A DNA stretch of 64,000 nucleotides from Zygnema circumcarinatum SAG 698-1b. Taxonomy: Eukaryota; Plantae; Zygnematophyceae. The translations under genes were made by a program, and so were the position numbers. The stretch is taken from positions 2,451,361-2,515,360 of the forward strand of contig CM074805.1 of assembly GCA_037447605.1 (NCBI GenBank), read 5' to 3'. The notes under the pieces are model-generated. The model did not search any database, was not told the origin of the DNA, and was given only the letters and a program-made list of their open reading frames with translations. Shown one piece after another: positions 58,631 to 60,601 of the stretch (the stretch's first letter is position 1; every line of letters starts with the position of its first letter).

Positions 58631-59184
58631 TGTTGCTCTGTTGGTCGATGATGCAGGTCTAGTTAAGTTCGGGGGTGTTTCGAATGCACATGTCCTATTC
58701 CGCTCAAGGAACTCGAATTTCTATATTTTTTTTCAATTTAAAAAAATTGATTCGATTACAAAGAAAATTCATTCACAATTCCTCTTTTCCTTTGGAAAAA
58801 AAAGATCTTTTCAAGAGAAATCTTCCGTCAACCCCATGTGCCTTGCAAAACCCATTTCCTTTAAAAAGATAAAAAAACAACATGATATCCCAGCTCTTCA
58901 GATCAAGCGATGAGGCCCACACATCAAAGCAAAAATGATCACAAAAGCCAAACCCGAGCAAAAGAAGAAGCACCAACGCCAAAGGAATTGATGCGGGTCT
59001 ACAAACAAGCTGCGCTCTCATTGCGCCTGCCGTCCCCCTAAAGCTGCTTCACCCACCCTCGAGCCACACCCTCCGAAGATATTGTCGATTGAGGACACTC
59101 CCAACAAGGCCTATTTTTTACAAGAAGCACTCTCAAAAATTTTAACTGCTGCTCAAACTTATCAGCAACAGCCTCTCTGCTTGC

Positions 59185-60137
59185 TCAGACCACTTCCTTG
59201 AGTGCAGGCATCATGCCATCGCCGCAGCCAGCCTTGATCGTTTGCACGGCCTCCTTGCACCGCTTTGCAAAGTCATGGCACCAGTCGCTTCGTTCTAAGG
59301 CCCTGGCCGCCTCCTTCCAGTTGTGCGTGCTCGTCTTTTCCAGAAAATCGGTGAGGTCAGTCCACGCCTTGGAGGAGTCCCACGTCGTCAGCGCCACATC
59401 CGCATACACTTTCTGGACATCGCAGCACCACTCGTCAAGGGCGCTTGCTCTCTCCGCAGCGCGATCGAGGGCCCTTTTGGAGGTCAAGAGAAGGAGAGTG
59501 TTGATTTGAAGCTGGTTCAAACACTGACTTCCCTCATACACCTGCGCCGCCACTCTCATCATGCAAAATAATATTCAGCAACGACAACGACTAGCCAGCA
59601 ACGAACAAACACGGTTATACACCGGGGCAGAAGCGGAGTTTATCGGTAAGCAGCGAGATGGGTGTCCGACCCCCCCTTTAATTTAACACTTTAATACACC
59701 GTCAATATAAAGAGTATCTTGGTACTCCAGCGTAAAATTTCCAAACTCCAAGGTTACAAAAAAGATGCAATTAAAATACTCATAACTTGCTTGCTTACCT
59801 TCGTATAGTCGAGCCCTAAAGTTCCTAGCTCCAGCTTTGCCTGCTCCTTATCATCATCCAGGTTGTAGCCTACACCGACTGCTCGAAACCCTCCGGAGCT
59901 GTTGTACACACAACTATGAGCACCCTCTTGCTTATGCAGATATTGAGAAGTTCGCGGAATGCAAAAGCTGCGGACAGTGCTCACCCCAATTTCTTTTTCC
60001 AGCTCTGTCAAAATCCCACCCACCCTATTCCAAGGCTTCTCTTCCCAAATCTTGCGCCCTTCAAGCCCTGCAAGAGAACTCAGCAGCACGGCAGCGACGA
60101 GCAACATGAGATGCAGAGTGACCCCACTCGAAGCCAT
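59185..60137 (-). CDS. Secreted T4-type (GH24-like) lysozyme homologue, 231 aa, 2 exons
   Basis: Exon 1 60137-59799 (gccATGg context, hydrophobic signal peptide, KQEGAHSCVYNSSGGFRAVGVGYNL) ends AAG|GTAAGC. Exon 2 59541-59185 follows CGCAG| in phase 0 and carries QKVYADVAL..FLEKTSTHNWKEAARALERSDWCHDFAKRCKEAVQTIKAG, matching the recalled T4-like C-terminal pattern (VLVDMAFNMG..AL...DW.EAA.EM..S.WA.QV..RA.RL...M..G). Confidence 0.8.
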
Positions 60138-60559
60138 GGCTGCCCCAGACCCCTCCTACCTGCTCGCTCGAAACAAGAAGGCACTCCACAACTATCGGCC
60201 TTCTTGCACAAGAGATTAAAAACGAGCGAGCAACAGGAAGAACGAGAGGGCGTGACTTCTCAAACGGAGATCCCAAGTGTGATTCCATGCAAGGCCCGTG
60301 TGCACAATCACGTGGCGGACAGGCAGAGAGCGACGTGTTTCTGCGCTGCTGCAGATCGGCGAGGCGAGGCGAGCATGCGCGTCCTCCAGTCCTCCTCGGG
60401 CCGCCGCCGCTCGGAAGCTCCGCCGCAAAGCCGCCGGCCCGCCGGCGCGGCCTCCCTCTTTCTTTTCTCGGAGCGGCCGTCGCCCTTTTGTGTCCCACAC
60501 CATGTCATGTGTGGCATCGAGGGTGTGGGCCACACTAGCTGCACCAATCCTTAATACTA

Positions 60560-60601
60560 GGGGGGGGGGGGGGGGGGNNNNNNNNNNGGGGGGGGGGGGG
60601 G
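60560..60601. other. Assembly gap (10 N) flanked by poly-G
   Basis: N at 60578-60587 between G runs of 18 and 14. Confidence 0.95.

What the first reader, a model, noticed from the sequence alone, without database searches (positions are those of the whole stretch)
59880..59927. Lysozyme catalytic triad is remodelled: Glu kept, Asp20 to Ser and Thr26 to Ala
Seen: aligning at a fixed offset of 60 gives E71=E11 (GAG at 59927-59925), S80=D20 and A86=T26. Established: T4 lysozyme uses E11/D20/T26; E11 is essential, and changes at D20 or T26 strongly reduce or alter catalysis. Inference: the protein may be a weak or altered enzyme, a lytic-transglycosylase-like enzyme needing only Glu, or a non-catalytic peptidoglycan binder (sensor, scavenger masking elicitors, or agglutinin). 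That would be a new kind of plant peptidoglycan-recognition protein distinct from LysM receptors.
Basis: partly seen in the sequence, partly recalled or inferred. Interest (0 to 1): 0.7.

Follow-up and report, generated by a model that had tools for sequence, protein, structure and literature searches.

The report
Secreted T4-like lysozyme, altered catalytic triad
A streptophyte green alga expresses a secreted protein with the fold of phage T4 lysozyme that keeps the key catalytic glutamate but, like all its relatives in streptophyte algae and liverworts, lacks the other two classic catalytic residues, so it probably cuts bacterial-wall-type sugar chains weakly or by a different chemistry, or only binds them.

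Summary
A two-exon minus-strand gene (60137-59799, 59541-59185) encodes a 231-residue protein with a signal peptide and eight cysteines. Spliced transcript contigs from three studies confirm it.

They align with T4 lysozyme E11, D20 and T26 in a family-profile alignment (E 4.5e-6, T4L 5-156) and in a structural alignment of the closest full-length homologue (Z 15).

The change is not private to this gene. All 13 sampled members of a clade found in Closterium, Spirogloea, Chara, Riccia and unnamed transcriptomes lack Asp and Thr. The sister group, metagenomic disulfide-rich GH24 proteins, keeps E/D/T (15/15 Asp, 13/15 Thr). The two groups are split by one long branch (99/99).

The clade keeps the Glu (11/13) and the Arg and Trp at T4L Arg145 and Trp138. 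Its most conserved block is the hairpin strand carrying the Ala. It has also lost the peptidoglycan-contacting Asn/Gln105.

My best reading is a Glu-only, attenuated or mechanistically altered glycan-strand-cleaving enzyme, comparable to bacterial SpmX. A pure binder is the main rival. Activity is untested.

The scan had already flagged the same remodelling in two paralogues elsewhere in this genome. The exons were not joined for any search or fold.

The parts
59799..60137 (-). Coding exon 1 (113 codons, Met1 to Lys113). It holds the signal peptide, an N-terminal extension, helix 1 with the catalytic Glu, and the beta-hairpin.
   Evidence: Translation. Homologues' tblastn matches stop at 59796. 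Spliced contigs join 59799 to 59541.
60066..60137 (-). Predicted signal peptide, about residues 1-24: a short n-region, a hydrophobic core LHLMLLVAAVLLSSL, then small residues. The cleavage site is approximate.
   Evidence: Read from the sequence. Homologues P0002, P0005, P0007, P0012 and P0053 have similar hydrophobic N-termini. No signal-peptide predictor was available.
59925..59927 (-). Glu71 codon (GAG), the equivalent of T4L Glu11 (general acid).
   Evidence: The column is Glu in 11/13 streptophyte and 14/15 classical rows.
59901..59903 (-). Asn79 codon, at the T4L Lys19 position. Most clade members have Asp/Glu here. The window protein and its nearest relatives have Asn.
   Evidence: column table: N x3, D x7, E x2, T x1.
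59898..59900 (-). Ser80 codon, at the T4L Asp20 (general base) position.
   Evidence: The column is Asp in 15/15 classical rows and in 0/13 streptophyte rows (S, H, L, T, N).
59880..59882 (-). Ala86 codon, at the T4L Thr26 (water-positioning) position.
   Evidence: The column is Thr in 13/15 classical rows. Streptophyte rows have Ala in 12/13 and Gly in 1/13.
59542..59798 (-). Intron, 257 nt, GT..AG, phase 0, between Lys113 and Val114.
   Evidence: Contigs of three runs from three studies skip exactly this stretch. The homologues align across the junction without a gap, DY.K|VY.G.
59185..59541 (-). Coding exon 2 (118 codons plus TGA): the C-terminal lobe of the lysozyme fold.
   Evidence: Translation. 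Residues 63-109 align with T4L 114-160. ESM features point to PF00959 clusters. This exon found 51 homologues.
59386..59388 (-). Thr165 codon, at the T4L Gln105 position (a peptidoglycan-contacting residue). Classical relatives have Asn here.
   Evidence: column table. The role of N/Q105 is taken from 10.1101/418723.
59272..59274 (-). Asp203 codon, at the T4L Gln141 position. This is a candidate relocated acid on the opposite lip of the cleft. It is a hypothesis only.
   Evidence: Streptophyte rows have Asp/Glu here in 9/14; classical rows have Gln in 12/15. No coordinates were available to measure distances.
59260..59262 (-). Arg207 codon, the equivalent of T4L Arg145. The Glu11-Arg145 pairing in T4L is recalled from memory.
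   Evidence: The column is Arg in 12/14 streptophyte and 14/15 classical rows.
59037..60400 (-). Minimum extent of the mature transcript seen as one spliced contig. It includes the 5' and 3' untranslated regions and runs on beyond 60400.
   Evidence: run X5, record 10 (1182 nt).

Best explanation
Shown: the gene is real, spliced and expressed. It encodes a protein with a signal-peptide-like N-terminus and eight conserved cysteines. It belongs to a streptophyte-specific branch of eukaryotic T4-type (GH24-like) lysozymes. On the single long branch leading to this clade, three things were replaced: the general-base Asp (T4L D20), the water-positioning Thr (T26) and the peptidoglycan-contacting Asn/Gln (Q105). 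The clade kept the general-acid Glu, the Arg aligned with T4L Arg145, Tyr18, Trp138 and the hairpin. The hairpin strand that now carries Ala is the clade's most conserved block.

Inferred: the cleft still binds a GlcNAc/MurNAc-type glycan strand. Glu71 still protonates the glycosidic oxygen. With no carboxylate base and no Thr to hold the attacking water, the reaction is either slow hydrolysis (attenuated muramidase, as in SpmX) or Glu-only chemistry, that is substrate-assisted or lytic-transglycosylase-like. Ser80 most likely keeps only the turn-capping structural role of Asp20, because that position varies (S/H/T/N/L) within the clade. The likely site of action is outside the cell or in the secretory pathway, on bacterial peptidoglycan.
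For: Gene model and expression. Homology and fold: exon 2 against T4L; ESM features to PF00959; family profile against T4L 5-156 at E 4.5e-6; proxy model pLDDT above 90 over the domain; Foldseek TM 0.72-0.74; VIA Z 15.3 to T4L, 12.3 to P22 lysozyme, 11.1 to SpmX, 10.6 to a fungal GH24. Clade-wide pattern: D20 column 0/13 Asp against 15/15; T26 column 12/13 Ala against 13/15 Thr; Glu 11/13; Q105 column T/S/A against Asn; Arg145 and Trp138 kept. One branch, 99/99, also when the trait columns are dropped. The lowest entropy in the clade (0.61 bits) is at AVGVG(Y/F)NLD. Precedents for activity without the Asp/Thr pair: SpmX and P22 D20L keep attenuated hydrolysis while E11A abolishes it, and D20C/A are tolerated; lambda lysozyme has no general base and a Ser at that spot; GH23 and GH46 have no identified base; the GH184 muramidase has Ser69 at the D20 position and an essential Glu41.
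Against: No activity data exist for any member. One lineage (the P0010 cluster, 5 members) has Asp-Ala in place of Glu-Gly, and P0014 has Gln there, though its gene model is doubtful. So the Glu is not indispensable to every member. Loss of Asn/Gln105 and other cleft changes could equally mean loss of peptidoglycan binding or a new ligand. SpmX differs in leaving T26 unconstrained, whereas here Ala is fixed. The residue mapping rests on a homologue's model and on alignments, not on a structure of this protein. The signal peptide is judged by eye.
Confidence: 0.4

Rival explanations
1. Non-catalytic glycan-binding protein. The lysozyme fold is kept as a peptidoglycan or chitin lectin (sensor, scavenger of elicitor fragments, agglutinin), and the Glu is retained for binding or fold stability rather than for catalysis.
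For: Both accessory catalytic residues and the N/Q105 contact are lost across the clade. One lineage has also replaced the Glu by Asp (P0010 cluster). The branch to the clade is long, which fits a change of function. In SpmX the E11A mutant mainly disturbs localisation and stability.
Against: Glu is kept in 11/13 sampled members across Charophyceae, Zygnematophyceae and liverworts, together with the aligned Arg145. Related Glu-only enzymes are active. Loss of N/Q105 argues as much against peptidoglycan binding as against catalysis.
Confidence: 0.3
2. Fully competent hydrolase with a relocated general base. An acid from elsewhere, such as Asp203 at the T4L Gln141 position on the opposite lip of the cleft, or the Asp/Glu that most relatives carry at the Lys19 position, activates the water.
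For: The T4L-141 column is Asp/Glu in 9/14 clade rows against Gln in 12/15 classical rows. The K19 column is Asp/Glu in 9/13 clade rows. From memory, T4L residues 21 and 142 face each other across the cleft mouth (the engineered disulfide; compare the PDB titles).
Against: Neither acid is conserved throughout the clade. The window protein has Asn, not Asp, at the K19 position. In a beta-strand the residue before D20 should point to the other face. No coordinates were available to measure distances.
Confidence: 0.13
3. New substrate. The remodelled cleft acts on another beta-1,4 glycan (chitin, chitosan, or an algal or plant wall or glycoprotein glycan) rather than on peptidoglycan.
For: Several cleft-lining positions changed together: T4L 97, 102, 104, 105 and 140-142. 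GH46 chitosanases are structural neighbours at Z 8.2-8.8. The lysozyme superfamily spans chitinases and chitosanases.
Against: Nothing points positively to a particular substrate. The closest relatives by sequence and by fold are muramidases.
Confidence: 0.12
4. Functionless relic. A decaying lysozyme gene is drifting after losing its catalytic residues.
For: Two of the three classical residues are lost. Pfam no longer recognises most members.
Against: The reading frame is intact with a correctly spliced, expressed mRNA. All eight cysteines and the hairpin are conserved across classes of streptophytes. The family has paralogues and persists from Chara to liverworts.
Confidence: 0.03

Closest known systems
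Phage T4 lysozyme / GH24 'viral-type' lysozymes (Pfam PF00959), including the disulfide-rich eukaryotic and metagenomic GH24 proteins P0019-P0050
   Same: Same two-lobed fold (Z 15, TM 0.73). Also shared: Glu on helix 1, Tyr18, the G-x-G hairpin, Trp138 and Arg145. With the eukaryotic relatives it shares all eight cysteines and the NLD motif.
   Different: It lacks the E-8x-D/C-5x-T signature (Ser80 and Ala86 instead) and lacks Asn/Gln105. It has a 2-residue insert (Ile-Pro) after the first cysteine. It falls below Pfam detection: no hit for either exon or for P0002, and only 2/15 clade rows hit at E 1 or below.
SpmX muramidase domain of Caulobacterales (co-opted, 'detoxified' GH24; PDB 6H9D; 10.1101/418723)
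   Same: A GH24 fold domesticated by a cellular lineage. The Glu is kept, D20 is replaced, T26 is lost and the cleft is remodelled at the root of the clade. Attenuated activity has been shown for SpmX. It is a structural neighbour at Z 11.1.
   Different: SpmX is a bacterial, membrane-anchored scaffold with D20L/R, an unconstrained position 26 and a lost Tyr18. Here the protein is eukaryotic and secreted with disulfides. Position 20 is polar and variable, position 26 is fixed as Ala and Tyr18 is kept. There is no sequence-level relationship beyond GH24.
Phage lambda lysozyme (lytic transglycosylase, 'GH24l' in PMC2976769) and GH23 goose-type lysozymes / lytic transglycosylases
   Same: Both use a single catalytic Glu without a carboxylate general base. 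Lambda has a Ser where the base would be, as Ser80 is here.
   Different: These are different families with no detectable sequence similarity. Ser80 is not conserved in the clade, so a lambda-like role for it is doubtful. Formation of 1,6-anhydro-MurNAc is untested.
Fungal GH184 muramidases (PMC10394673)
   Same: Active eukaryotic muramidases of the lysozyme superfamily, with an essential Glu and Ser69 at the T4L Asp20 position.
   Different: A different fold subgroup (phi29 gp13-like), fused to SH3-like wall-binding domains, and not homologous at the sequence level.

Membership tests
GH24 / PF00959 phage-type lysozyme | T4-lysozyme two-lobed fold | tested here: met
   Tested on the closest full-length homologue, P0002, as a proxy (53-57% identity to the window's exons). 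Domain pLDDT is above 90. Foldseek TM to T4L is 0.72-0.74. VIA Z is 15.3 with rmsd 2.8 Å over 148 residues. The window's own joined protein was not folded.
GH24 / PF00959 phage-type lysozyme | Significant match to the family's sequence model | tested here: inconclusive
   Neither exon hits Pfam. P0002 has no hit, and only 2/15 clade rows reach E 1 or below, the best at 4.9e-4. However, 14/30 rows of the wider alignment hit PF00959, the clade profile hits T4L at E 4.5e-6, and exon 2 finds PF00959-type relatives by phmmer.
GH24 / PF00959 phage-type lysozyme | Catalytic Glu (T4L E11) at the end of helix 1 | tested here: met
   Glu71 lies in the conserved H-E-G motif.
GH24 / PF00959 phage-type lysozyme | Asp (or Cys) nine residues after the Glu (T4L D20, general base) | tested here: not met
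   The window has Ser80. The column has 0/13 Asp in the clade against 15/15 in the classical relatives.
GH24 / PF00959 phage-type lysozyme | Thr six residues after that Asp (T4L T26, positions the water) | tested here: not met
   The window has Ala86. The column is Ala in 12/13 clade rows against Thr in 13/15 classical rows.
GH24 / PF00959 phage-type lysozyme | Muramidase activity (hydrolysis of MurNAc-beta-1,4-GlcNAc with inversion) | not testable with these tools
   This needs purified protein.
SpmX-like attenuated (co-opted) GH24 | Glu kept while D20 and T26 are replaced at the root of a cellular clade | tested here: met
   One 99/99 branch separates the 13 Ser/Ala-type rows from the 15 Asp/Thr-type rows, also when the trait columns are dropped. 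Glu is kept in 11/13.
SpmX-like attenuated (co-opted) GH24 | Residual, Glu-dependent hydrolysis and peptidoglycan binding | not testable with these tools
   Known for SpmX only.
Lytic transglycosylase (Glu-only, 1,6-anhydro-MurNAc product) | A single catalytic Glu with no carboxylate base in the cleft | tested here: inconclusive
   There is no acid at or next to the D20 position in the window protein (Asn79-Ser80). Asp203 at the T4L-141 position could still reach the cleft, and no coordinates were available.
Lytic transglycosylase (Glu-only, 1,6-anhydro-MurNAc product) | 1,6-anhydro-muropeptide products | not testable with these tools
   This needs LC-MS of digestion products.

The most novel reading that the evidence does not exclude
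The streptophyte clade is a new functional class built on the T4-lysozyme fold. One version is a Glu-only lytic-transglycosylase-like enzyme, or one with its base moved across the cleft to Asp203. The other is a secreted peptidoglycan-recognition protein, which green algae and bryophytes would use to process or sense bacterial wall fragments, or less likely their own plastid peptidoglycan. That would be a peptidoglycan-handling system of the plant lineage unrelated to LysM receptors.
Probability: 0.15. Interest if true: 0.7.

Novelty: new variant of a known kind. Interest (0 to 1): 0.45.

Why it matters
Streptophyte algae and bryophytes live among bacteria and still carry a peptidoglycan layer around their plastids. 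Yet almost nothing is known about how they cut or sense peptidoglycan. This work defines an unstudied, expressed, secreted family conserved from Chara to liverworts. It shows that the odd active site is a fixed, selected feature rather than decay. It also gives a short list of residues to mutate (Glu71, Asn79, Ser80, Ala86, Thr165, Asp203). It would be a second, independent case, after bacterial SpmX, of a cellular lineage domesticating a phage-type lysin by removing the Asp/Thr pair while keeping the Glu. That makes the question of what the Glu does on its own testable in a eukaryote.

Tried and rejected
- **Pfam and PHROGs on single exons.** Pfam gave nothing and PHROGs gave only chance-level hits.
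- **phmmer of exon 1 against PDB.** It gave only spurious Csm3 and ribosomal hits at E 0.3 or above, so exon 1 alone cannot prove homology.
- **Word-index protein search.** Searches with either exon were blank. This is expected, because full-length relatives exceed 1.75 times the query length. The third search, with the clade alignment, returned only three of its own members because of the candidate cap, so the window's own annotated protein was never obtained as an id.
- **Organism of the transcript-only homologues.** P0005, P0007 and P0010 come from SRA run contigs without names.
- **Literature.** No paper in the searchable library links GH24 or phage-type lysozymes with streptophyte algae or bryophytes. 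A citation for the T21C-T142C cleft-spanning disulfide was not found and is given from memory.
- The idea that S80/A86 is a one-residue alignment slip hiding an Asp fails. The Tyr-to-Gly-x-Gly spacing is identical to T4L and to the classical relatives. The HMM alignment is gapless there. The model's strand and turn boundaries match. In the window protein the neighbouring residue is Asn, not Asp.
- **Rejected: pseudogene.** See the rival explanations.

Full report
**Gene model and expression**

On the minus strand an ATG at 60137 opens a 113-codon exon that ends ...DYTK at 59799 and is followed by GTAAGC. After a CAG acceptor, a second exon runs from 59541 to the TGA at 59187-59185 (118 codons).

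Homologous proteins laid on the window by tblastn match only these two blocks and break at their ends. There is no second copy in the window.

Contigs of three public runs from three studies skip exactly 257 nt between 59541 and 59799, with GT..AG ends on the minus strand. One 1182-nt spliced contig covers 59037 to beyond 60400. The gene is therefore real, spliced as modelled and transcribed.

I never joined them, so no search or fold of the window's full-length protein was made. The closest full-length homologue served as a proxy.

**The observation**

The local sequence is HKQ-E-GAHSCVY-N-S-SGGFR-A-VGVGYNLDDD.

**Is it a T4-type lysozyme, and is the alignment right?**

Each exon alone is invisible to Pfam, and exon 1 alone finds nothing meaningful in the PDB.
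- Residues 63-109 of exon 2 align with T4 lysozyme 114-160 (E 0.018).
- The language-model features of exon 2 point to PF00959 clusters in 29 of 30 hits.
- The word-index searches were blank because of their length window. I therefore used the exhaustive HMMER search with exon 2, which found 51 proteins.

The nearest 14 hits come from these sources:
- Closterium species (two-domain proteins)
- Spirogloea muscicola
- Chara braunii (GBG88992)
- the liverwort Riccia fluitans (KAL2649409, KAL2609677)
- unnamed transcriptomes

All are annotated only as hypothetical proteins.

A profile of this group matches T4 lysozyme over residues 5-156 at E 4.5e-6. The match is gapless through the hairpin and puts the consensus Glu on E11, Ser on D20 and Ala on T26.

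An AlphaFold model of the closest full-length relative, P0002, gave further support. P0002 is 252 aa and 53-57% identical to the window's exons, with the motif YNSTGGYRAVGVG.
- Its pLDDT is above 90 across the domain.
- It matches T4L with TM 0.72-0.74.
- Its VIA Z is 15.3 (rmsd 2.8 Å over 148 residues, model 75-234 on T4L 1-157).
- That range reproduces the sequence offset, and the model's strand and turn boundaries (strand 88-93, turn, strand 99-102) match the T4L register.

Other structural neighbours are P22 lysozyme (Z 12.3), pesticin (13.1), SpmX (11.1), the fungal Trichophaea GH24 (10.6) and GH46 chitosanases (8-9).

**The change is clade-wide and old**

The more distant hits are metagenomic or metatranscriptomic proteins. 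Some are named GH24 phage-related lysozyme. One lies on a compact eukaryote-like contig. They share all eight cysteines with the streptophyte proteins.

| Column (T4L numbering) | Classical relatives (15 rows) | Streptophyte clade (13-14 rows; fragments lack some columns) |
|---|---|---|
| E11 | Glu 14/15 | Glu 11/13 |
| K19 | T/V/L/S/K/E | Asp or Glu 9/13; Asn in the window and its two nearest relatives |
| D20 | Asp 15/15 | Asp 0/13 (Ser 6, His 4, Leu, Thr, Asn) |
| T26 | Thr 13/15 | Ala 12/13, Gly 1/13 |
| Q105 | Asn 12/15 | Asn/Gln 0/14 (Thr, Ser or Ala) |
| 141 | Gln 12/15 | Asp or Glu 9/14 |
| W138 | Trp 14/15, Tyr 1/15 | Trp 14/14 |
| R145 | Arg 14/15 | Arg 12/14 |

The exceptions at E11 are the P0010 cluster, which has Asp-Ala in place of Glu-Gly, and P0014, whose N-terminal gene model looks unreliable.

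A maximum-likelihood tree separates the two groups by one long branch (length 1.64, support 99/99). The window is sister to P0002. The split stands when the four trait columns are removed (SH-aLRT 99). One event therefore suffices to explain the loss. The direction of change is inferred from the shared E/D/T of the classical group, T4L and Pfam's family, not from a rooted tree.

Within the clade the lowest-entropy block is the second hairpin strand, AVGVG(Y/F)NLD, which begins with the Ala in question (0.61 bits against 1.1-2.3 elsewhere). The remodelled site is under purifying selection and is not decaying.

**What the literature says about such sites**

- In T4L, Glu11 is the general acid, Asp20 the general base and Thr26 positions the water (PMC2976769 Table 2; PMC5606550).
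- Asp20 also caps the hairpin turn through hydrogen bonds to the amides of residues 22 and 24. Ser, Thr, Asn and His, the residues seen here, can keep that structural role.
- General bases are poorly conserved in the lysozyme superfamily. None is known in GH23 or GH46, and lambda lysozyme has none, with a Ser at that spot.
- The GH184 muramidase KsGH184 needs Glu41 and has Ser69 at the D20 position (PMC10394673).
- The closest conceptual precedent is SpmX of Caulobacterales (10.1101/418723). It is a phage GH24 domain co-opted with Glu kept, D20L/R and T26 unconstrained. Both it and the P22 D20L mutant retain attenuated hydrolysis, whereas E11A abolishes it. D20C/A are tolerated in phage enzymes.

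**Most likely mechanism**

Shown:
- the fold
- the predicted secretion signal, judged by eye and shared by the homologues
- eight conserved cysteines
- expression
- retention of the Glu/Arg/Trp/hairpin core
- clade-wide loss of Asp, Thr and Asn/Gln105

Inferred: the cleft still takes a GlcNAc/MurNAc-type strand and Glu71 still acts as the acid. Turnover is either slow, as in SpmX, or follows Glu-only chemistry (substrate-assisted or lytic-transglycosylase-like). I give this 0.4.

The rivals are:
- a non-catalytic binder (0.3), supported by the lineage that has also lost the Glu
- a relocated base such as Asp203 (0.13)
- a new substrate (0.12)
- a relic (0.03)

At the alignment level that test is not met for this protein, because Asn79-Ser80 has no acid. 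It could not be checked in three dimensions.

**Comparison, novelty and earlier scan notes**

The protein is a divergent homologue of GH24, but it fails two of the family's three signature residues and sits below Pfam's reach. I found no paper on the family.

The scan had already noted the same remodelling in two paralogues elsewhere in this genome (s1-390349, s1-390346) and the gene itself (s1-350934). My independent family survey agrees with those notes.

I class the finding as a new variant of a known kind: a eukaryotic, secreted counterpart of the attenuated GH24 theme. Interest is moderate (0.45).

Noticed in passing
window 60560-60600: An assembly gap (10 N) sits inside a long poly-C run about 420 nt upstream of the start codon. 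The promoter and 5' end region of the gene is therefore not fully resolved.
   Followed up: no
window 59967-60160 and 60066-60311 (minus strand): Run X2 shows two further GT..AG-type joints, skipping 192 and 244 nt, with short supporting sides of 26-29 nt. The second would remove the ATG at 60137. These may be minor alternative 5' splice forms or artefacts.
   Followed up: no
P0010 cluster (L002:63-680; P0055, P0057): One lineage of the family has Asp-Ala instead of the Glu-Gly of the H-E-G motif, and Gly instead of the fixed Ala. These members may be non-catalytic. The source organism is unknown (an SRA transcript contig).
   Followed up: partly
P0015-P0027 (single-exon fragments from genomic assemblies): Many fragments begin ...Q|VY.G..CLN, the same point as the window's exon 2 after a CAG acceptor. 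This suggests that the phase-0 intron position is conserved across the family.
   Followed up: no
P0053 / P0001 (Closterium sp. NIES-67/68): Closterium encodes tandem two-domain versions of the protein. Both domains have the Glu and the Ser/Ala pattern, but the Arg145-equivalent is replaced by Val in one domain and Ala in the other.
   Followed up: partly
L004:1302-2138 and L005:4152-4988: The classical-triad relative P0019 lies on gene-dense metagenome contigs next to LRR, GH65 and transketolase-type genes. This looks like a small-genome eukaryote rather than a phage. Its taxon is unknown.
   Followed up: partly
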